Notes under the pieces: generated by a model | Databases searched by the model: none | Seen by the model: only the letters and a program-made list of their open reading frames with translations | What the model was told of the DNA's origin: nothing | Shown here: positions 18,389 to 32,600 of the stretch, one piece after another | How positions within the stretch are numbered: position 1 is the first letter of the stretch | Layout: each line of letters starts with the position of its first letter | Program-made: the position numbers and the translations under genes | Assembly: GCA_020536535.1 (NCBI GenBank) | Contig: JAHLWZ010000694.1 | Span: 1 to 64,000 of the forward strand | Reading direction: 5' to 3' | DNA length: 64,000 bases | Source: Pelomyxa schiedti | Taxonomy: Eukaryota > Protista > Evosea

Positions 18389-21300
18389 TCAGGCAAGGTA
18401 TACTTGTATAACACTCTCAATTTTTGCGCGGCACATGGGACACTCTGTGAGAGTCACACTGCACTTGAGGCAGCATGCTATGTGTTTGCAGGGGAAAAAC
18501 AGAACTTCCCTTTGATTGGCCAAGCATACAACACACTCGTTGCTGAAGGAACTTGTGTTTATGGCGGCTGTAGCTGCGGCGGCTGCGGAGGAGGCCACGG
18601 ATGACAGAGTGGGAGCAGAACTTGCTGTAGTGGCAGTTTTACTTTTTTCTGTGATGACCACAGTACCTGCACTTTTGTGTTTGGTCTGTTAACGGACCGG
18701 GAATTGTTAATGACGAGGCGAGTTACCTGCCATCCACATTTAGCATATCACCGTCCGATATTTCTTCCATAAGGCCTGGAACCCCCACCACGGCGGGGAT
18801 TCCAAGTTCTCGGGCGGTAATTGCTCCGTGTGAAAGTATACCTCCGTTGGCAACAACAACCGCAGCGGCCTTTTTGGTTTAGAAAAGAATGGGAGAGAAC
18901 GAACTACCTTTAAGAACAACGGTGTCCAAGCAGGGTCCGTTGTAGAGCAAACAAGGATGTGGCCCACAGGAAGTTTGCTCATTCCCTCGTAAGGTGAGAG
19001 CACAACACACGCAGGAGCAGAGGCGAAACCAATGCTTGCTGCTAATCCCGAGAGCTGCTTCAGTGCTGTTGGTTCCTTTGAATCGGCTATCGCAGGTCCT
19101 GGGAATTCACTTACTAAAGTAGAGGCAAGAAAGTAATAGAGGCACACCTAGTACTTCAGGGAGTGGGCGTTTGGCGGAAGAAGGAATCCGAAATGCCGTA
19201 TTGCCAATGAACAACTCTGGTGCAACCATATTTTCAAAGTGTTGTACTTGCAGTTTGTTGTGCTCAATGGAGGCACGAAGTCGAGGAATTTCTACTCCAG
19301 TCTCTCTTGCATTGGTTAGCCTTTATTTAAATAGTGGTGGATGTAAAGTAAAGGAAGATACAAAGAATTAAAGACTTCTTCTAAGGAGAGGTAGAAGAGA
19401 TCTCCTTGGTTCTCAATAACACCCTTGGCAAAAAGGAGCTGTGCCATTCGAACGAGATATTTCCTTAGTTAATTTAGAGCTCGTTATGGCCGCTTGTCGT
19501 CAACCTGCAAAGGGCAATGTACAAAACCACTAGACACTTAGAATTTTCACGCCATCGTGTCATTTCCTGAAATCGTGCAAGAACCTTCCTAAATGATTTA
19601 GAGTGGATTAATTACTTGTTGGATTACGTCAAAAGCGGTCGAAGAAGAAAGGACTGAGATTTTAGTGCAGCCTGTTCTGCGGTTTGCCGCATCTGAATGA
19701 GTTGGGTAATGCGCTGCGAGGCTTTATCTTCTTCTCCTCTTGTTAAAGTTTGCTAATTGGTAATGAGTGTGATTTGCCTCAAAGAACATCAAACACCTAC
19801 AGCTATTGAAGAAACAAGTCTAACAACAATTTCCGGTGCTTCACACCATCTGGGGCAGGCCACCTCCAATTCTCTCTCCCCTCGGAAACCATATTGCCTT
19901 ATGAATTTCCTTAGTTCAGTCATAAACCGGGTCCCATTCAAGTCTGTTTCCCAGGTAGGTGGCAAAGGGTTCTGTAAATGGTGAGCTGATATATTGTATT
20001 TATTCTCTTTACTTGATTGATCATATGCATTACGTCAAGATCTTGTGATGCTGTTTGTGCAAGGGAATAAAGGTCCTGGTTTTGTTCTGCTGTCCATACT
20101 CCTCCAAGGCTTGCAAGTAGCACTTAACTTGTTTTATTTCTTCACTTGCTTTCTTGGATAATACCTGTTATTGTCTTGGGATCTCGAAACACTTCACCAA
20201 GAATGGATGTGTATACCGAGACGTGAACTGTTAAGTTCATGTACCTATAGAATGCCCGTAACAATTTGGGGAGACAAAATCTGACTCACATTACTCCAAT
20301 GGAAACGAAGTTGTCAATCATTTCTTGTAATTGCTGGGCAGCCTGTTCAAGTGACAATGCTTCACCATTGAAATTATTGTATTTATCAAGAAGGGTTTCC
20401 TTTGCATCTGTGACCATTTGCTCAACACCCAAAACAAAACTACTGGAAGACCACATCATGGATAGGACTGTCCAGAAGCCTTGCATACGCTTAAGATACC
20501 CTACGGCAGGGTAGGAAGCGAGCTTTGCAACATTATCTGGAATGTTGAACTGGAAAACTGTCATTTTGAATTGAGCTCTTTGCAGGAATGCACACAATTT
20601 TGCATGTATCAGCCCATGATGCACCAACAAACTTCTCAGACATCTCATGAGTAACATTTACATTCTGAAAAGTTCTCCCCCATTTGATAGCATAAAATCC
20701 CCGATCCTAATCGACTGAGACGAAAGGGTCAAAGCAAACAAGAAAATTACCGCGTTGTAGGAAACACCACTAGCAGTACAAAGTTCCAACATACTTGTGT
20801 CGATTATTTGTTTGAAGGTTGTCCAAGTCAGAGGTGTTAGTGCATAGCCCATACTCTCCCGAGTGTTAGCACACGAGAAGATGTCCCTAAAACAATGAGC
20901 TTTGAAGTGGAAAGTACAGCACACGGTTGAGAGGAAACTGGTTTCATGGCAGCTCTAGTCACAGGCCTTGATTGCAAGAACCACAATGTAGAGCCGTCCC
21001 ATGCCCACTCGATGTCCTGGGGGGAATGAAGACGTTTCTCAAGTAACACTGACTGAGAAAGAAGTTGTTGCCAACCAGCTTCTGGCATCAAGGCCGTATG
21101 CTCAGTTGATGCCTGATAATATTAAACCCGTGCATTGTCAATTGAAGTATTACCCCACAATGGGATTTTAATTCCAAAGATTGCTTATCAAAAGAGAACT
21201 GTAATGGGTAATTATGTTAATATGAATAAAAAGAGCTTCTTTGTTACCTGTGAAGGAAGCACTGTTCCAGATACAACAGCATCCCCAAGTCCTTGTGCAC

Positions 21301-22590
21301 AGTTGACCACAATGTCGGGACTGCCATTGACAGGATTAACTGTGAAAAGAACCTTGTTTTATGTTAAAAAGCATTACAGGACAGTAAGTCCATACTCCAG
21401 AGCACACAGGGTGTACCATGCACTGAACAATAACTGCAAATTTCACGTCTTTTGAGCTAGCACCTTCTCCTAGTGCTAATCGATAAAGGGATGACCTTTC
21501 ATTGCTATGTGGAATGGAGATTAGAAAGAGTGAAAGATATCTGTAGTTACCTAGCCGAATCCCAGCACTTAATAATATTCTCACGTAGATTCTCAGGGTT
21601 AACATTGAGGATGGTATCGTGCATACCAGCAAATGCATGCTGTTTGGAGTCTTCTTCGACACCTGATGAGCGAACTGCAACAAGTGGAAGAGTTTCTGCG
21701 GCTGCGGGAGAAATCTCTGCTCCAGGCTTGGTGTGAGTAAATCTAGCAGGGTTACTTAATCGCATATCGACGTGATACGCAACTTGTGTGTAAGCCATTT
21801 TTCCAGCAGTAGTGTGGTTTGCGTTTCGATCTCATGAGAGAGCTCTTCAGGCCAACAAGAAGCCACATTATGAACATGAGATGACCTTGGAGGGGTCCCA
21901 CTATGTTGAACTGAGAAACGGTGACTTCACAAATACAAAACATCGTGGCGAAATTACGTGAGCTGGATGTTGTGGTGGCCAGTTGTGACACAGAACTAAA
22001 GCTTGCGCTCGTGGGGGGCGGAGCCGCCGCTGAAGTTGCAACAGTGGTTTGCGTCAGTGCAGGCTCACTTGCAGGAGAACTAGAGCTTGTTGCCATGGTA
22101 ATTGGCATTGTGAGGGCAGATTCAGTCAAAGCCGGGTGTTTGGCTTTAAACAAGTCGTATGCTGGGCATGTGATAACGTAACCTAGAATTAAAAAAAACC
22201 CATTAATATCAACGAAAACCTAATACCTACGAGTAGGGAAAAAAGAGGAGAGAGAGAAAGAAAAAAAAAAAACAAGGCACCAGGAGGCACTGTCAACCCG
22301 GCGTCAATCAACAACGACAAAGATGCCGCTTTTCCGCCAACCAATTGCACATCTCCGGAGGCATGCAAACCAACACAATAAGGTGATGTCCTCACAGCGG
22401 ATCTTGCCTGTCCGGATAAGTTCGTTGTCGTGGTAGTTGTCATCTTCGTCGTTTTGATCGGCGTTTTCCTTCTCTGAAGAGTGATTGAATTCCATTCAAG
22501 ATCGTGAACCTCTGGCTTCGAAGGCTGCCATTCACGCCCCGAGATTAGTGATACCGTCTTGGGGGTGAAATAAGATGGTTTGGAACTCAT
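18389..22590 (-). CDS. PEP-utilising dikinase (rifampin phosphotransferase / PEP synthase-like) fused to a C-terminal C3HC4 RING finger
   Basis: ATP-grasp motifs VGGKAASL, VAVRSSGVEED...FAGMHDTILNV, AVIVQCMV, GLGDAVVSG and PQDIEWAW...LQSRPVT; central RPH-like region (CANTRESMGYALTPL, FIRQYGFRG...PRW); phospho-His domain TDPAWTPLF...GGILSHGAITARELGIPAVVG; then RING CVVC...FFPCKHIACCLKCSVTLTECPMCR. Confidence 0.85.
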
Positions 22591-24863: not shown

Positions 24864-25044
24864 ATTCAGGAAGGGCACAAGGGGATTAGACACCAGCATT
24901 ATTTATCAGCCACCATAGGAATTTGGAACTTACTCCACCACCATGTACTAGTTGAGATATCTATTTAAGGAGGAAAAACGAAACAAAATTTTGTTCATTT
25001 TGGTAAAATAGTTTTTTTTCTCTACCCGAGACTCTCTGGCTTCT

Positions 25045-27788
25045 TTAGGAATTGTTGGTGTTTGTTGTTGGGGTGGCGGTAACAGAAGGCTCTGCTATGG
25101 GTTGAGCAGGCACAGGGACTTGTGTGGCAGAAGTTACATCGGAGGTGGAAACAGTTGGGGCCGGTGTGGGAGTGGGAGTAGTACTTGTAGGCAATGGAAG
25201 AGGGGAGGGATTGGAGGGAGTTGAAGTGGTTGTTGGAACAGCAGGGGTGGTGTCGGCGTGGGCGGCGGTAGAGGGAGGGGTGGCAGGTGTGAGTATGGAC
25301 GGGGACGTGGTGCTGGAAACCATAGCCAAAACGGCATCTTCTAGCTCCTTCCATAGCCTGCTGATGGCCTCAGTGTCCTCCGTGTTTTGTTGTCTGTGAA
25401 GCTGGAAAAATGATTATATAGGCGAAATTGCTTATCTTGTGGTATTGTGGTGTGAACAAATAAGCCATACTTCATTGCGTATTCTGTAGACATTTCTCCT
25501 GGCATCCGAGCTAACAGATGCCACATCTTCAAGAAGAGAATCTGGCAAGTAGTTTAGTTTATTTTTTTTGTTGAGGGACTTGTAACCTGTTTCATAGGGA
25601 ACAGAAAGGTGAGGGAGAAGCATCGCCGGCATTTTGGCCAGCCAACATTCAGCGTCTAGACAGGACATTGTGCTGTGCCTCCATTTTGACCACATTCCAA
25701 CAACACCAAATTGACTTCGTTGGGCTGGTTCAGAAAGAGGTGACAATGGACTGAGAACGAGAGTGACTGGCTGAACACCACATTGAAAAAAATGACCTAA
25801 CTCCAGAAAATGGAGAAAATACCTGCACTTCTAGAGCACCTACCACAGGCAGTGTATTGAAAAAGTTTACTGTCGCTTCCACAGTTTCCTGTAAGAGTGT
25901 CAAGGAATGATGTTATTCCACACACCACTACCCTAGTTTCTCCTGGGAAACCGACTACCAGGGCTGCCCTGACTAAAACTGATCTTTCTAACAATAGAGT
26001 GAGACATTTTCGTATCATCTATGCTATCATCAAATGTAGAGGGAGACATGAGGAAAGCCACCTCTACTGTTGTGTGTTTGCTCATATTGCTCAAAACTGT
26101 TTGTTCACAGCTTTCAACTCCAATGAAAACAAGTCGGCATCCTGATTTTTGCATCAAATCAGCGATTTCTTCGTCTTGAACTGTATCTGCTCTATTTCAA
26201 GTCAGATACCTCAGTTATTGCACATCCTTGCATTCTCACCCCTCACCCCCTCCCTTATCATATGAAAATATGCCTGATAAATGCCTTCCAAACAACATGG
26301 AGGTCACGTTTAATAAGTTCAGTCAAAAATTCCTTTGCCACAGTACGGTTTATAAGAAGATTATCATTGGTAAAGAGTATCTGGAGTGAATGAATAAGAG
26401 TGTGAGGTTAAATGAACTAGGTACTCGTCGGAAACCATCTTTCCAAGGTGGGACACTACTAATCGTACGAAAAATGGAATCAGCACTGCATCGCGTTACA
26501 TGAGGGGCAACTGCAGCGTAGTCGCAAAATGAACACCTAAGTGGTGTGAAAACAAGCCTGCTATGCACATTGCCAATCAATGGCATACTTAAATGGGCAC
26601 CCTTGTCCAACTTGAACAGGGTACCAGGGTATTGGATATGCTGGTACAGGTATTGCTGACCAATCTACTTCACAATCATTCGGCTCTTCTTCCTCAACTG
26701 GAGCAAATGAGACAACAGGTTCTTGTTAAAGAAGGAAAGTGCACTTGAAGTGAGAGTGAAATTTCCAATATCTGTGCTATACCAAGCTACATTGGGAATT
26801 CCCATCCATGAAGCATCCCCCTTAAGTTTTGACAATTTGTGAATAAAGCAAGAGAGGGAAAAAAAAAAAAAAATACCTTGAGCAAGCTATTGATCAATTT
26901 TATTGCAGATTTTTCACCATAAAGACTCACAATGAGATAGTCTACAGAAGACTGGAAAGACTGTGGACAAAAAAGAGGGGTGCCATTAATTCTCAAATCC
27001 CCAGTTTCTTTCTGCTTCAAAAAAAGCTTATAGGCCCTCAATATTCCGTGAAAATTGAGAGGGATAAGTTTGATGGATACTTAAAAACACGCATCCCCCC
27101 AGCAATGACAATAATGCCAGGATTCACTGATTTTGCGTGTGCAGCAATTCTCTCTGTGAACCACCTTTTGGATGTAAAAAAAAAAAAAAAAACAAGATGT
27201 GTCCACACCATGTTGAAGTAAGTGTTGTGCTTATAAGCAGTAGTTTTGATGCAGCCACCTTCTCCTCAAACCTGGCTCGTGTGGCACGGCAGTAGGAGAA
27301 CTCCACAGAAGCAGGAATTCCACAGTGTGTTTGTACTTGCTGCGCAATTCGGGCAGCACCAAGCATAAGGTGGGCATGCTTTCTCCCAAAGTTAACAAGG
27401 GCTTGTGCTGCTGCTGCGTTCTGCTTTTCTTTAAGCAAGCAAAAAAAAGGGGAAGGGAGTTGTGTTCCGTCCAAGAGGCGAAAAAAAAGAGAGACATTGT
27501 GTGTGGTATGGTTTAAGTCTCACATTCGCTTACTTTGCCGTTTGTGAAGTACTCACACAGGAACGGAATGCTAGCATTGTAGCGGTCCTCAACGAGCAAA
27601 GGGTTCTCTATTACAAGAGGGTTCTCTGGTAGCAGTTACTCGGTGAGCAACAACAACAACTAGCAAAGTAGATCCTTTAATTATAACATAATATAATGTT
27701 CTCCCAGCACCCATCCCTGTTGGCATTAGTTCCCTGCCACTTTGACAACATACCAGCTATTTCGGGTGCCCCGATAACCAGTGCCATC
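25045..27788 (-). CDS. B12-binding-domain radical SAM protein (class B methyltransferase-like)
   Basis: Cobalamin-binding-type segment PGIIVIAGG...VDYLIV..YGEKS...GIPNVAWY; spliced CxxxCxxC motif VQVGQGCPFK|CSFCDY; TNDNLL; MQKSGCRLVFIGVES; LVVGFPGET. Thr/Pro-rich tail. Confidence 0.8.
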
Positions 27789-27963
27789 GTCACTTGAACC
27801 GACAGAAAACCAGAATGGATTTTTGATGACCTTTTTTTCCCGAAGGTTCTTTTTGGTGTTGGCGGAAACGGGTTCCGTTTCAGTATTTCCTCTGGTAACA
27901 ATGAGGCTGGGGTTCAGGAACCTCCTAAAGGTAACTTCTAACTCCTGGTCAAAGTCCAGCAGT

Positions 27964-29621
27964 CTAGAAATGAGAGTAGAATTCAAGAGGGTGAAGGTCA
28001 TGTGTGGGATGTGAGTGTGTGACTATTGAGCGGCGCAGCTGGGTGCATAGGTCACATTTCCCTGAGAAAGTTTGGGCTGGTGGTGCAGTGGAATTTGTTT
28101 GGGTTGTTGTTGCTGTGGTGGTGGTTGTTGTTGTTGCTGCTGCTGTTGGTGTGCTTGTTGTTGTGGTGTTTTGTTGTGGTCTTGTGACTTCTGGGTGGAA
28201 TTCTTGGATGTAGGAGAATAGTGACCGGACACCACCGGTGTAGAGGGCATTGATCACGGGGTACTTTAGAGGCGATAAGGGCTTCCCCATGTCTTCCACA
28301 TCAATTCCGAAACCTGGAATACTTCCTGGTGAGGGAAAGTGAGACTTTTCCAGGGCTATTACCACTGCATAGTCCTGGTATGTATTTTCCATACAGGTCC
28401 TTTTCGGATGAGCATTATCGCCATAAAAATGGGTTATTGAAGGTCATACCACATGAAAGTGAGTAACGTTTGACAGGTTTCTATTTAACTGAATGCTATC
28501 TCACAGAAAGAAGAATATTTACCTTGCACACGAACCAGGGTTATCTTCAAAAATCCGTTCTAGGGTCTTTTGTTTTGACAATGGTCTAAAACCTGTTACC
28601 CACAAAATTTCTTTACATAAAAGGTAAACCTTAGGGTCTCTATGGCTCTCCCTCCTGGATGCAACCAATATTTCTCGGATATGTCACTTAGGTAATTGGA
28701 GTGTAATTGTTGCCAGTCTTCCAATGGATACAGGCGATTTACATCTCGCGATGCTAGGTCCTAATTCAAATAAATGCCTGCACCGTATTGTAGATAAAGC
28801 ACACTGCACGAAAGTCTTGAACCCAAGGCATAACATCTGTGAGTAATTAATAACATCGTTGGGGTGCGGTTGATGGCAATACCCATCCCCACATCGTCAC
28901 AAGCCGTCAACACGCCCTGAACCTTGGAAAATGGAATGGCCTAACAACAAAAAAAAGCATTACGAACAAAACGTGTAAAAATTGGAGTGAGGAAGCAGTA
29001 CCTCATTGTGAAAGGGAGAAATTGACACTAACAGTGTCCTCAGCCCTCGATCATACAACTTTCTAAGTGTTTCAACTATTACAGTAAACCAATATAAAAG
29101 TTTACAAACTAAAGAAACCTGCAGAATGTCCATCTCTGAACCAACTTGAATTCGTCTCCACATAGTCAATGGACATGCCTTCCTCGTTAGCAGCCTCTAG
29201 GACACCACACAACCCTTCAATATTTAGCATGGGTTCTCCACCACCTAAGTGTCTCTAAGATTAAACAAACAATGAAAGATCCGCAAAAATGGCAAATACC
29301 AATGTGGACAGAATAGCAGTGCAGTGCTTGTATCTGAAAGTGCTGTTATTACTCTGAAACAATAAAGAGTGACATGCCCTTTGAAACATCAACTTTGCTT
29401 GAGCCTTTGTAATGTAGTCACGTGCCCTTGTTGGAGAACAGTTGTACAGACAATGTTTGCATCTGAACCCACATTGTGAAAAACAAATAGGTGTAAAAAA
29501 TAATGGAGGCACCTGCTGGTGCAGTGATAGTTTGTAATCAACCCTTTTCATTGTGTTGAGTTGCAATGAAAATGTTCCTTGTAAAAGTAATACCCCCACT
29601 CATCAAAGACGTGACATTCAT
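27964..29621 (-). CDS. Radical SAM protein (bacterial/archaeal type, C-terminal CDLC motif)
   Basis: Spliced start MNVTSLMSG|GLITNYHCTSR|CKHCLYNCSP (CxxxCxxC); HLGGGEPML; YVETNSSW; LLVSISPFHNE; C-terminal KCDLCTQLR...LHPLEFYSHF*. Confidence 0.85.
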
Positions 29622-29694
29622 TTTTCAAGTGTTCCACTTCCCCAACAAAATTGACACGAATTCGAAGAAGAAAAGGAAGATGAATCTTTTGGTA

Positions 29695-32600
29695 TCAAGA
29701 TGAGTTTGAGAGAGGGCACAAGAGCTCGAGTAGTGACTGTACATTGTGGGCGAACGTGCCATTGAAGCATAGTACTCGCTGCCAGTGGTTGTTGTTGTTG
29801 CTGCTGTTGTTGTTTGAGCTGTTGGTGTTGTGTGTGGGTGACCGTGATCGCGACCGAGATTGTGGCTGCGATTGTGGGTGTGAGTGTGATGCGGGTGGAG
29901 GTGTGATTGACTTGGCTGGTGCTTTTGATTCTGTTGTGNNNNNNNNNNNNNNNNNNNNNNNNNNNNNNNNNNNNNNNNNNNNNNNNNNNNNNNNNNNNNN
30001 NNNNNNNNNNNNNNNNNNNNNNNNNNNNNNNNNNNNNNGCTGTTGGTGTTGTGTGTGGGTGACCGTGATCGCGACCGAGATTGTGGCTGCGATTGTGGGT
30101 GTGAGTGTGATGCGGGTGGAGGTGTGATTGACTTGGCTGGTGCTTTTGATTCTGTTGTGTGGGTTTCTGGTGTAAGTTCCTTGAGGTTGTGGAACAGGTG
30201 CCCATGTACCTAGTTATGGGTTGGGTTTTTAGTAAAGTTTTTTTTTTTTTTTTTTTTTTCTTGTGTTGAGGTTGAGTGAGAAAGAGGTATTTACCTTTGC
30301 ACCACTGAGGGGAGATGATGAAAACTTGGATTGCAGTTCAGAATTGACAACCACAACATTGCCAATTTCACTGATGAGGATTGACTTCCATCCTTTGCAC
30401 GCGTTGTTGCTGTTGATTTCAAGCCCCCCTGTGGCGGCACTTCCGCGGCTAGTAGGATGCGACCGCTGCGTAACCCCACTGTGATTATGGGATGATGATG
30501 TGGAAGTGGTTGTTGTGTTGGAAGTTCTGCTTTCAAAAGACCTCAATGCGGATGTTAATACAAGGTCTTTGTTGACAAATGGAGGGGGCTCTTGGCTTAA
30601 AGAGTTAGCAATTCTGGCCAGGATTATCGCCTTTTATTGGTTTGATTAGCAGTGACCAATTAATTGCGAACCGGCGTGGCGGAATATGTACCTTCTTTGG
30701 TCCTGCTTCGCAATTCCATTTCGAACAGCTGAATGCAAATCCTGGTAGCATTTTACTCATTTGGCTGTAAATTCTTTTTTCCATAAGCACATCCTTCTAC
30801 ATACACATAATGTGAGCACCCCCATACAAAAAAGGATAAGAAAGTACTTTTTTCCAAGGAAGAACGCTTGCAGGAACACACCAGGGTAGAAAAATTCCAT
30901 ATCTTGCCAGATCCTGATAGATATTTATCTTTCTTTCTCTACTTACTTTGTCATACCTCAAGAAAGAGTGGGGGTGGCTTGGGTTGATTTCCTGGTTCAT
31001 ATATCAGGGGGAAAACTAGCTTGCATCCTTGCTCTGATACTTCAATAGTTATCTTTTGAGCATGTTAACGCCATGATAGTGAGGAATCGCGAACCTCGAG
31101 TGTTTTTGTGATGAGAATAAGCCAAGCTTTACTTGGTCCACTGGGATATATACACCACCATTTAAATGGTAGTTCCGTGAATCGAGGCTACAGTTGACCT
31201 TGGTTAAAAAAAAAACAAACAAATCTGGCTATACCTGTATTAATGCATGGGGAGTAGCATGAAGTGTATGAAAGGAGATAATTCTGGTAGCTTTATTAAA
31301 GGCAATTTCGGAAATGCCATCCGTCTGCCATTTTGATTTTTCCTATTCCCATAAATAATGCCATTTATAATTCCATACTCACTACCTTGTCCCACCAGCC
31401 AACATGAAAGTCTCGAACCAAAACATGAGGGGGCAAGAGATATGAGACTTTTAAGGTAGCGGAGTCAGTTAGATTATCACCTTTCTCTGCAATCAGCGGT
31501 ATATAAGTGTGACGTGATATGGAAAGTGACTGGGGTGTGACTATCTGTTTTGTAAGTGCCTCGAAGTTGTGATGTTAGCTACCAGGTCTTAGAGTCCAAT
31601 TATTTAACTTCTTGGCTCTTGGGGGAAATCCTAGGATTTCATAATATAGGACACCTCCCTTTTGGAGAAATTATTCCTTGAAAGAGATGAAGAATCCACA
31701 CGATGGTAATGAACTCAGATGTGGGTGGAGTAATGACGTCAAATGATGTGTGTAGTAGACGAATGACTGTACTTGTAAGTGCCAAGCTTTCAGGTACCTT
31801 GGCACAAGTATGTACATTACTAAACTCGATTTCTCCTAACGTTCCAACAGTACTGTGGATGCCTCAAAACCGAGAAAGAACTGGGAAAAATTAACTACCT
31901 GTAATTCTTGGCAAAATTGACCCAGATTCCAATTACATACGATTTTGTGGAATAGGACACCTGAAAATGCTGGCCTTTGTCACAGTACATATCAGAATAC
32001 TGGAAGTAATTCAGATTGGACTAAAGAAAGAACTTGGACCTGGAGAACTTTGGCAGTAGCATCATCTATACAAGAAAGGGAGTGTTCTCGCAAAGTATGC
32101 GTAACAAAAGGTAACCTCTCTTTCATCTCAGGGTGGTAAAACTGCAAAATTCTACCCTCAGCAATCACCTTGTAGCTTCTTTATTGTGAAGTCATAATAG
32201 GAAAAAGATAAGCTGGCAGCTTACATCCTCTGCTTGTTCAGCAAGTTCCAATACCCGTCGTAAATCTTCATTTCCTTCCTCCAGCCACAAGCTCATGAAA
32301 GTATTTATATCTGACTCGGCCATTGGATTGATTTGATTCCTACCGGTGTTTCTGTACTGTTCCCATTCATATTGTTCGGCTTGCATGATAAGGTGCCGAG
32401 CATGTTCCTGCAGTGCAGGAGTCTCCCAATCCGCAATCTCAGCATCCTCCGGAATTAATTTGTCCTTCTGTTTTCCCTCTAAACCATAGATACAAGAAGA
32501 GTGAAAAATGACCTCGTCCTCATCAATTGCAGCGGTATGAACCCGCGTTGGGCTCGCAGAACTTTTTCGTCTTTCCCCTTCACGTGTCCTATCTGGCCTC

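What the first reader, a model, noticed from the sequence alone, without database searches (positions are those of the whole stretch)
18389..22590. Rifampin-phosphotransferase-type dikinase fused in frame to a RING E3-ligase finger
Seen: ATP-grasp, central substrate domain, then the phospho-His swivel domain (His codon 18828-18830 in GGILSHGAITARELGIP). This is the domain order of bacterial RPH-like enzymes, not classic PEP synthase. Removing the 55-nt GT-AG intron 18672-18726 gives VDGS|AGTVVITEK, completing the canonical swivel-domain end and reading straight into an Ala/Thr linker and a C3HC4 RING (CVVC...PCKH...CLKC...CPMCR). Inference: a laterally acquired small-molecule kinase grafted onto a eukaryotic ubiquitin-ligase module, so possibly a metabolite- or antibiotic-sensing E3, or a self-degrading detoxification enzyme. 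I know of no described protein with this architecture.
Basis: partly seen in the sequence, partly recalled or inferred. Interest (0 to 1): 0.85.

Follow-up and report, generated by a model that had tools for sequence, protein, structure and literature searches.

The report
Amoeba dikinase enzyme fused to RING
The anaerobic amoeba Pelomyxa schiedti has a real, intron-rich gene that joins a bacterial-type ATP-driven small-molecule phosphorylating enzyme to a ubiquitin-ligase RING finger; I found this domain combination only in this species, and its role is untested.

Summary
Window 18389-22590 (minus strand) holds a stop-free 21-exon gene of 1094 codons. Its parts, in order, are a PPDK_N ATP-grasp, an Rph-type central domain, a phospho-His swivel domain (His codon 18830-18828), a Ser/Thr/Ala linker and a C-terminal zf-C3HC4_3 RING.

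The 55-nt GT-AG intron 18726-18672 joins the swivel and RING exons in frame. The RING exon also encodes the last strand of the swivel domain. It has no ATG ahead of the RING.

I obtained no RNA reads for the window copy. A 54%-identical paralog on contig C106 has the same layout, and a spliced transcript contig (run SRR23919877) crosses its homologous junction exactly as predicted. That paralog is already in NCBI nr as KAH3766842.1, named only "phosphoenolpyruvate synthase".

The enzyme part is not a recent transfer. It groups with RING-less homologs from the amoebae Mastigella and Echinamoeba, so the RING was added in the Pelomyxa lineage before a duplication. It falls far below the cut-offs for Rph, PigC or RedH, so the substrate is unknown.

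The RING is cIAP-like, and a homodimer model passed its controls. Database and literature searches found no other dikinase-RING fusion. It is a new domain architecture of unknown function.

The parts
18389..22590 (-). Whole coding region: 21 exons, 3285 nt, 1094 codons plus stop; 20 GT-AG introns of 34-98 nt
   Evidence: Frame-continuous, stop-free exon chain. Colinear exon by exon with the C106 paralog and with bacterial 840-890-aa homologs.
22281..22590 (-). Exon 1: N-terminal extension of about 85 residues, then the first ATP-grasp motif (VGGKAA...VPPG)
   Evidence: Which ATG is used (22590 or the one near 22443) is not settled.
21958..22182 (-). Exon 2: ATP-grasp strand (GYVIT...) followed by a Ser/Thr/Ala-rich low-complexity insert
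   Evidence: The paralog has a longer insert at the same place.
20925..21910 (-). Exons 3-8: core of the PPDK_N ATP-grasp, with motifs VAVRSSGVEED, FAGMHDTILNV, VIVQCMV, QDIEWAW and LQSRPVT
   Evidence: Pfam PF01326; NCBIfam positions about 100-320; PDB 5HV6 and 5FBS.
21154..21198 (-). Exon 7: 45-nt phase-0 micro-exon (FSFDKQSLELKSHCG), conserved in the paralog
   Evidence: The equivalent peptide is present in the annotated paralog protein.
19148..20886 (-). Exons 9-18: central Rph-type (Rph_4th, PF27448) putative substrate-binding domain
   Evidence: NCBIfam hits at profile positions about 563-628 of Rph, PigC and PRK06241. Colinear with the paralog, whose transcript carries a precomputed PF27448 hit. 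The exon 18/19 junction (34-nt intron 19147-19114) is the least certain.
18727..19113 (-). Exons 19-20: phospho-His swivel (PEP-utilizers) domain up to ...NVDG
   Evidence: Pfam PF00391, E 4e-16; PDB 5FBS residues 815-858.
18828..18830 (-). Codon of the predicted phospho-accepting histidine (His967 of the model)
18672..18726 (-). Intron 20: 55 nt, GT...AAG, phase 2, with an in-frame TAA; joins the swivel and RING exons
   Evidence: The homologous 63-nt intron of the paralog is absent from a transcript contig.
18667..18668 (-). Competing CAG acceptor 5 nt downstream; with the same donor it would shift the frame and end the protein after 9 codons, without a RING
   Evidence: Read from the sequence. 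Its use was not tested.
18644..18671 (-). Start of exon 21: last strand of the swivel domain ([S]AGTVVITE)
   Evidence: Matches the ...DGTAGTVEIL and ...DGTTGTVEKL C-termini of the RING-less paralogs. In the paralog protein PF00391 runs to profile position 72 of 72 across this junction.
18536..18643 (-). Ser/Thr/Ala-rich linker of about 36 residues
   Evidence: The same kind of linker precedes C-terminal RINGs in many other genes of this genome.
18431..18535 (-). RING core, first to eighth zinc ligand (C3HC4)
   Evidence: Pfam PF13920, E 1.4e-14; all ligand columns invariant; best solved relatives are cIAP1 and cIAP2.
18389..18430 (-). 13-residue C-terminal tail (R-AKIESVIQVYLA) and TGA stop
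   Evidence: Aligns to the end of the cIAP1/2 RING constructs. The tail residues form part of the modelled dimer interface.

Best explanation
This is a genuine Pelomyxa schiedti gene for one polypeptide of about 1094 residues. An Rph/PigC-superfamily dikinase (ATP-grasp, Rph-type central domain, phospho-His swivel domain) is followed by a flexible linker of about 36 residues and a cIAP-like C-terminal RING.

Shown: the in-frame gene structure; intact catalytic and zinc-binding motifs; the same fusion in a 54%-identical paralog; splicing of the swivel exon to the RING exon in RNA of that paralog; RING-less relatives in other amoebae.

Inferred from what is known of the family (Rph, PEP synthase, PPDK): the ATP-grasp passes the beta-phosphate of ATP to His967. 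The swivel domain then carries it to the central domain, where a hydroxyl of an unknown small molecule is phosphorylated, giving AMP and Pi.

Inferred from IAP-type RINGs: the RING dimerises through its N-flank and C-terminal tail and recruits a ubiquitin-charged E2. The protein would then ubiquitinate itself or proteins brought near it.

My preferred reading is an enzyme whose abundance, or whose neighbours, are controlled by its own RING. Because the RING hangs on the mobile swivel domain, substrate or ATP turnover could influence ligase output. That last step is speculation.

Evolutionary route: a terminal 'linker + RING' exon, a module common in this genome, was captured downstream of an old amoebozoan dikinase gene in the Pelomyxa lineage. 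The fused gene then duplicated.
For: Gene structure:
- Stop-free 21-exon chain with GT-AG introns.
- Domain hits.
- The RING exon begins with the last strand of the swivel domain, in the same frame.
- The RING ORF has no ATG before the RING in either paralog.

Paralog:
- C106 is colinear over about 940 aa at 54% identity, including the micro-exon and a phase-2 intron at the same place.
- The two RINGs are reciprocal best matches, 64% identical in the core.
- Transcript contig L109 from SRR23919877 lacks 7 introns; its last junction is exactly the predicted one.
- PMC10579272 names SRR23919866-77 as P. schiedti transcriptome runs.
- NCBI KAH3766842.1 (1188 aa) carries PPDK_N, PEP-utilizers and zf-C3HC4_3.

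Evolution: Mastigella and Echinamoeba homologs end just after the swivel domain and form a clade with the Pelomyxa paralog.

RING:
- It aligns with cIAP1/2, MGRN1, MYLIP, BIRC7 and MUL1 through to the C-terminal tail.
- Homodimer model: score 0.41 against a best control of 0.00. That mark was reached by 21 of 30 proteins solved as pairs and 0 of 23 solved as single chains. The runs agree in at least 82% of contacts and the partner pLDDT is at least 86. The pass may come from memory of IAP dimers.
Against:
- A consensus-like CAG acceptor 5 nt downstream (18668-18667) could give a frameshifted, RING-less product.
- No protein matching the window copy appeared in the searches that could have returned it. 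How it is annotated is therefore unknown.
- No biochemical data exist for any member of this amoebozoan clade.
- The substrate cannot be inferred: the paralog scores 247-308 bits against cut-offs of 883-1350 for every named equivalog.
- The ATP-grasp is about 25 residues shorter than in bacterial homologs after the GLG...VSG motif.
- E3 activity is inferred from sequence alone.
Confidence: 0.8

Rival explanations
1. The window copy mostly makes a RING-less enzyme. Splicing would use the stronger CAG acceptor at 18667 with the GT donor at 18726, shifting the frame and ending the protein nine codons later. The RING exon would then be a minor or regulated isoform, with alternative 3' splice-site choice acting as an on/off switch for the RING.
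For: Two AG acceptors lie 5 nt apart (AAAAG then TGCAG). CAG|G fits the general acceptor consensus better than AAG|T. No reads were available for this copy.
Against: The frameshifted product would lack the last strand of the swivel domain, which all homologs keep. AAG acceptors are used at several other well-supported junctions of this gene, for example 18870|18869, 21353|21352 and 19464|19463. The linker and RING stay open and conserved in both paralogs. The paralog transcript uses the in-frame junction.
Confidence: 0.08
2. The fusion is an artefact: a chimeric assembly of whole-genome-amplified DNA, or two neighbouring genes (a dikinase and a small RING protein) merged only on paper.
For: The genome was assembled from amplified single-cell DNA (PMC8887013), a method that can create chimeras. 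Only 55 nt separate the two parts.
Against: The same arrangement sits on another contig in a paralog that is only 54% identical. A transcript contig spans that paralog's junction. The RING ORF has no start codon of its own. The end of the swivel domain is encoded in the RING exon.
Confidence: 0.02
3. The protein is real, but the RING is not a working ubiquitin ligase. It would serve only as a zinc-stabilised dimerisation or docking module for the enzyme.
For: The homodimer model passes its controls. Some relatives of this enzyme family, such as PEP synthase, form oligomers (PDB 9DAE and 8A8E have 24 chains each). Function was not assayed.
Against: Beyond the zinc ligands, the positions that IAP-type RINGs use for the E2 and ubiquitin are kept in both paralogs: a hydrophobic residue after the first Cys, Pro after the seventh ligand, Arg after the eighth, and an aromatic residue near the C-terminus. 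The closest solved relatives are all active E3s.
Confidence: 0.1

Closest known systems
KAH3766842.1, 'phosphoenolpyruvate synthase [Pelomyxa schiedti]' (contig C106 paralog; P0271)
   Same: Same architecture (PPDK_N, Rph_4th, PEP-utilizers, linker, zf-C3HC4_3). Same exon layout, including the micro-exon and a phase-2 intron before the RING exon. About 54% identical over about 940 aa.
   Different: 1188 aa, with much longer low-complexity inserts in the N-terminal part. Shorter linker (about 25 aa) and shorter tail. One fewer intron in the region of exons 18-19. It is deposited but described only by an automatic name.
Rifampin phosphotransferase Rph of Listeria monocytogenes (PDB 5FBS, 5HV1)
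   Same: Three-domain order of ATP-grasp, central substrate domain and C-terminal swivel with the catalytic His. It is the best solved match for the swivel and ATP-grasp exons.
   Different: Rph has no RING and is a bacterial protein of 867 aa. The amoeba paralog reaches only 247 of the 999 bits needed for the Rph equivalog. The central domain is barely similar, so rifamycin need not be the substrate.
Prodiginine ligases PigC and RedH, and uncharacterised PRK06241-type 'PEP synthases'
   Same: Same superfamily and full-length colinearity. These models score as well as or better than Rph.
   Different: All scores are far below the cut-offs (281 of 1350; 308 of 945). None of these carries a RING.
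Amoebozoan homologs: Mastigella eilhardi EP01105 (P0420, 900 aa) and Echinamoeba exundans EP01122 (P0275, 904 aa)
   Same: Closest relatives of the enzyme part (39% and 30% identical to the paralog). They share clade-specific motifs such as AFAGMHDT and TPLFLK-A-AVVVE-GG-LSH.
   Different: Both end a few residues after the swivel domain, with no linker and no RING. Both are known from transcriptomes only.
IAP-type dimeric RING E3s (cIAP1/BIRC2, cIAP2/BIRC3, BIRC7, XIAP), and also MGRN1, MYLIP and MUL1
   Same: zf-C3HC4_3 spacing and position at the extreme C-terminus. The conserved Pro, Arg and tail aromatic are present. The modelled dimer uses the N-flank and the tail.
   Different: The partner domains differ entirely: BIR, CARD and FERM domains there, a dikinase here.

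Membership tests
Rph/PigC-type three-domain dikinase superfamily (PPDK_N, Rph_4th, C-terminal PEP-utilizers) | N-terminal PPDK_N ATP-grasp with its nucleotide-binding motifs | tested here: met
   PF01326 hits on three exons. NCBIfam positions about 100-320. PDB 5HV6 and 5FBS. The motifs are visible in the alignments. A loop after GLG...VSG is about 25 aa shorter than in bacteria.
Rph/PigC-type three-domain dikinase superfamily (PPDK_N, Rph_4th, C-terminal PEP-utilizers) | Swivel domain with the catalytic His as the last domain of the enzyme | tested here: met
   PF00391, E 4e-16, positions 22-69 of 72. It maps to 837-882 of 898 in PRK06241.2-2 and to 815-858 of 867 in 5FBS.
Rph/PigC-type three-domain dikinase superfamily (PPDK_N, Rph_4th, C-terminal PEP-utilizers) | Central Rph_4th domain (PF27448) | tested here: inconclusive
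   PF27448 gave no hit in any local Pfam scan here, not even for the full-length paralog; it may not be in the local copy. The evidence is indirect. The paralog transcript protein has a precomputed PF27448 hit, and the window exons are colinear with it. One exon matches Rph, PigC and PRK06241 profile positions 563-628.
Rph/PigC-type three-domain dikinase superfamily (PPDK_N, Rph_4th, C-terminal PEP-utilizers) | ATP-dependent phosphoryl transfer through phospho-His to a small-molecule hydroxyl | not testable with these tools
   This needs an enzyme assay.
Rifamycin-inactivating phosphotransferase Rph (NCBIfam NF041857 / NF000283 equivalogs) | Whole-protein score at or above the curated cut-off (999 or 1700 bits) | tested here: not met
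   The paralog P0271 scores 247 and 161 bits. The window exons give only 15-37 bits each. The joined window protein was not scored.
Classical PEP synthase / pyruvate phosphate dikinase | Order ATP-grasp, swivel, PEP/pyruvate-binding TIM barrel (PF02896) | tested here: not met
   The swivel is the last enzyme domain. No PF02896 hit appeared in any window exon scanned or in the paralog. The genome's true PPDK is elsewhere, on contig C790.
RING-type E3 ligase, zf-C3HC4_3 (IAP-like) subclass | Eight zinc ligands with C3HC4 spacing | tested here: met
   PF13920, E 1.4e-14 against a cut-off of 27 bits. The ligand columns are invariant across 24 sequences.
RING-type E3 ligase, zf-C3HC4_3 (IAP-like) subclass | E2/ubiquitin-contact positions (hydrophobic after the first Cys, Pro after ligand 7, Arg after ligand 8) and a C-terminal tail with an aromatic residue | tested here: met
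   Pro is invariant and Arg nearly invariant. The alignment to cIAP1/2 runs to the last residues. The roles of these positions come from my knowledge of IAP and BIRC7 structures and were not tested here.
RING-type E3 ligase, zf-C3HC4_3 (IAP-like) subclass | RING homodimer | tested here: inconclusive
   The model supports a dimer: score 0.41 against a best control of 0.00. That mark was reached by 21 of 30 proteins solved as pairs and 0 of 23 solved as single chains. Contact agreement is at least 82% and partner pLDDT at least 86. The tool warns that a pass may reflect memory of solved IAP dimers.
RING-type E3 ligase, zf-C3HC4_3 (IAP-like) subclass | E2-dependent ubiquitin transfer | not testable with these tools
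   This needs an in vitro ubiquitination assay.

The most novel reading that the evidence does not exclude
The RING is tethered to the mobile phospho-His swivel domain. The catalytic cycle, or occupancy of the central domain by a small molecule (a xenobiotic, antibiotic or metabolite), could therefore gate E3 activity. That would make a ligand-sensing ubiquitin ligase built from a bacterial-type dikinase. Alternatively the pair could act on a non-protein substrate, coupling phosphorylation and ubiquitination.
Probability: 0.1. Interest if true: 0.85.

Novelty: new variant of a known kind. Interest (0 to 1): 0.55.

Why it matters
Both halves belong to well-known kinds of protein. My searches found their combination only in Pelomyxa schiedti. 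There it has been kept intact in two paralogs that have diverged to 54% identity, and at least one of them is transcribed. Retention of that kind argues that the RING does something useful for, or with, a small-molecule phosphotransferase.

The case shows how a bacterial-type enzyme long resident in amoebae was wired into the eukaryotic ubiquitin system by capturing a terminal exon. It also offers a compact test system for whether enzyme turnover or ligand binding can control a RING ligase.

It is a caution for annotation too: the deposited paralog is named 'phosphoenolpyruvate synthase', which it almost certainly is not.

Tried and rejected
- Exhaustive phmmer search with the RING exon: 9246 hits. 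None of the best 150 can be a dikinase fusion. Only 10 are 688 aa or longer, and these are Mind-bomb, IAP, LRR-RING or RING-only proteins. One hit (P0017) later proved to be the paralog's transcript fragment.
- Metagenome scan with the alignment of the two RING exons: three loci, all unrelated GC-rich RING genes with no dikinase nearby.
- Architecture search with the swivel + RING part of the paralog: 29 hits, none covering the RING.
- Bacterial genome scan with an ATP-grasp exon alignment: 80 loci, all distant. Summed tblastn scores against the window gene were at most 292 bits. No donor can be named.
- Literature searches: no paper links such a dikinase to a RING or discusses it in Archamoebae.
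- Pfam on the central-domain exons and PDB on exon 8: nothing significant.
- Possible link to the neighbouring 'radical SAM' finding: no Radical_SAM match on this contig and no Pfam hit on the ORFs I tried, so I dropped it.
- GC-AG alternative (donor at 18730, acceptor at 18667): also in frame (VDG-TVVITEK). I rejected it as less likely because the GT-AG version reproduces the conserved DG-x-A/T-G-T-V ending.
- Joined window protein: it was not searched, folded or exported. Exons were searched singly by reference, and only frame continuity was checked in a script. The paralog protein P0271 served as the stand-in for whole-protein analyses.
Full report
ORGANISM AND LOCUS
The window is contig C694 of a 52,367,397-base assembly in 5337 contigs. 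That matches the published Pelomyxa schiedti SKADARSKE genome of 52.4 Mb in 5337 scaffolds (PMC8887013). The paper reports about 7.4 introns per gene and 98.4% GT-AG introns.

THE OBSERVATION
On the minus strand an ATG lies at 22590 and a TGA stop at 18391-18389. Between them I built a chain of 21 exons with 20 GT-AG introns of 34-98 nt. The chain reads without a stop for 3285 nt, or 1094 codons.

Searched exon by exon, by reference, the pieces give:
- PPDK_N (PF01326; E 1.4e-11 and 7.7e-9);
- PEP-utilizers (PF00391; E 4e-16; positions 22-69 of 72);
- zf-C3HC4_3 (PF13920; E 1.4e-14).

NCBIfam places the exons colinearly on PRK06241-type, Rph, PigC and RedH profiles of 860-900 residues, with the swivel at the profile's C-terminal end. 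The best solved match is Listeria Rph (5FBS). The His codon at 18830-18828 falls in the stretch aligned with the catalytic His loop. Bacterial homologs of 840-890 aa align from the VGGKAA motif to ...VDG.

New details: there is a conserved 45-nt micro-exon at 21198-21154. The ATP-grasp is about 25 residues shorter than in bacteria after the GLG...VSG motif.

IS THE FUSION REAL?
Genomic arguments:
- Intron 18726-18672 is phase 2 and contains a stop.
- Removing it gives ...VDG-S-AGTVVITE..., which reproduces the conserved end of the swivel domain. RING-less paralogs in the same genome end ...DGTAGTVEIL and ...DGTTGTVEKL. The last strand of the enzyme is thus encoded in the RING exon, in the RING's frame.
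- The RING ORF has no ATG upstream of the RING, so it cannot be translated on its own.
- The acceptor is AAG. Several other well-supported acceptors of this gene are also AAG.

A paralog on contig C106 is colinear over about 940 aa at 54% identity. It has the same micro-exon and a 63-nt phase-2 intron at the same place, followed by a linker and a RING. The two RINGs are each other's best match in the genome, at 64% core identity. One fusion event therefore preceded the duplication. This also rules out an assembly chimera.

RNA evidence for the paralog:
- A hit from the exhaustive RING search, P0017, turned out to be a 406-aa protein called on a 1796-nt Logan contig of run SRR23919877.
- The contig is 100% identical to C106 over the spliced exon blocks and 99.7% over its unspliced first 587 nt. 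It lacks seven introns, and the last missing intron is exactly the predicted one, C106 18380-18318.
- PMC10579272 lists SRR23919866-77 as P. schiedti transcriptome reads.
- The same 90% cluster holds NCBI KAH3766842.1, 1188 aa, 'phosphoenolpyruvate synthase [Pelomyxa schiedti]'. It carries PPDK_N, a complete PEP-utilizers domain (to position 72 of 72) and zf-C3HC4_3.

A CAG acceptor 5 nt downstream (18668-18667) would, with the same donor, shift the frame and drop the RING. I rate that as a minor or regulated isoform at most.

WHAT THE ENZYME IS
The whole paralog protein matches PRK06241-type models, RedH, PigC and Rph over its full length, but only at 247-308 bits against cut-offs of 883-1350. 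It belongs to the superfamily and is not an ortholog of any characterised member. The name 'PEP synthase' does not fit, because there is no PEP/pyruvate TIM barrel. The nucleotide-binding and His-loop motifs are intact in both copies.

ORIGIN
The closest non-self relative of the paralog is a 900-aa protein of Mastigella eilhardi (39-42% identity). Next is a 904-aa protein of Echinamoeba exundans. Both end shortly after the swivel domain and have no RING.

I built a quick maximum-likelihood tree of 83 rows, set up as follows:
- the paralog stood in for the window gene;
- its linker and RING were cut off;
- bacterial ORFs outside 780-960 aa were left out.

In that tree Pelomyxa + Mastigella has SH-aLRT 96. 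With Echinamoeba and one metagenome protein added, support is 100.

The two RING-less, intron-poor Pelomyxa genes on C797 and C793 nest instead inside a clade of database proteins (SH-aLRT 97 and 100). The named relatives of that clade are mostly Anaerolineales and Chloroflexota.

So the genome holds two lineages of this family. One is an old amoebozoan lineage that gained the RING in Pelomyxa. The other is a separate bacterial acquisition. No bacterial donor of the old lineage can be named.

THE RING
At least eight other genes of this genome end with the same module: a Ser/Thr/Pro-rich linker, a zf-C3HC4_3 RING and a 12-13-residue tail. The whole genome has 65 six-frame matches to the RING exon at E up to 0.01. 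Capture of a terminal exon is therefore a plausible origin.

The closest solved RINGs are cIAP1, cIAP2, MGRN1, MYLIP, BIRC7, MUL1 and XIAP. The alignment runs to the C-terminal tail, with its aromatic residue.

A homodimer model scored 0.41 against a best control of 0.00. That mark was reached by 21 of 30 proteins solved as pairs and 0 of 23 solved as single chains. The runs agree in at least 82% of contacts and the partner pLDDT is at least 86. The interface uses the N-flank and the tail. The tool warns that such a pass may be memory of solved IAP dimers.

HOW IT PROBABLY WORKS
By analogy with the family, ATP would phosphorylate His967 on the swivel domain. The domain would then deliver the phosphate to a small molecule bound in the central domain. 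The RING, on a flexible linker of about 36 residues attached to that mobile domain, probably dimerises and recruits an E2, giving auto- or neighbour-ubiquitination. The substrate, the target, and any coupling between the two activities are unknown.

NOVELTY
Searches found no dikinase-RING fusion outside this species, and literature searches found no description. The paralog is already deposited under a generic name. I class the finding as a new architectural variant of known kinds. It is lineage-specific, retained in two diverged copies, and transcribed in at least one.

METHOD NOTE
The joined (spliced) protein of the window gene was not searched, folded or exported. Exons were searched singly by reference. 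Only frame continuity was checked in a script.

Noticed in passing
G000 contigs C797 (L001, L023) and C793 (L002, L024): There is a second pair of Rph-type dikinase genes, 54% identical to each other. They have few introns, and neither an intron at the swivel end nor a RING. In the tree they nest inside a clade of database proteins whose named relatives are mostly Anaerolineales and Chloroflexota. This looks like a separate and more recent bacterial acquisition.
   Followed up: partly
L023 about 1-330 (contig C797, minus strand, just downstream of the dikinase stop): About 150 nt after the stop of the RING-less C797 dikinase, on the same strand, another ORF starts with Met and carries a RING-like Cys/His motif near its N-terminus. 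It runs into a GT-repeat at the contig end. This may be coincidence, or it may be a neighbour arrangement like the one that preceded the fusion.
   Followed up: no
L021 (contig C106) 312-748: A near-identical partial copy of the paralog's last two exons sits right after a run of N. It has a few substitutions and a 1-nt deletion inside the intron. It is either an assembly or haplotype duplicate or a recent segmental copy.
   Followed up: partly
L109 1-587 (Logan contig SRR23919877_63824): The 5' part of the transcript contig is colinear with the genome, so introns are retained and the reading frame is broken. The 3' part is fully spliced. The contig appears to mix unspliced and spliced RNA.
   Followed up: partly
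G000 loci L012-L020 (contigs C821, C676, C824, C123, C931, C911, C237, C321): At least eight other genes end with the same module: a Ser/Thr/Pro-rich linker, a zf-C3HC4_3 RING and a 12-13-residue tail ending in an aromatic-rich motif. Pfam found no known domain in the ORF parts I scanned upstream of these RINGs.
   Followed up: partly
window 25022-30205 and whole contig C694: Another note of this scan places bacterial-type radical SAM genes at 25045-29621. A whole-genome search with PF04055 gave no match on C694, and five ORFs in that stretch had no Pfam hit. Exon-wise searching may have missed them.
   Followed up: partly
P0291 (JGI metagenome protein, 722 aa, named 'rifampicin phosphotransferase'): In the tree it sits on a very short branch next to the Echinamoeba exundans protein. 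It is probably an amoebozoan gene within a metagenome.
   Followed up: no
G000 contig C790 (L004): The genome's classical pyruvate phosphate dikinase is encoded here in a long open frame of about 700 codons. It is unrelated to the finding except through the shared PPDK_N domain.
   Followed up: no
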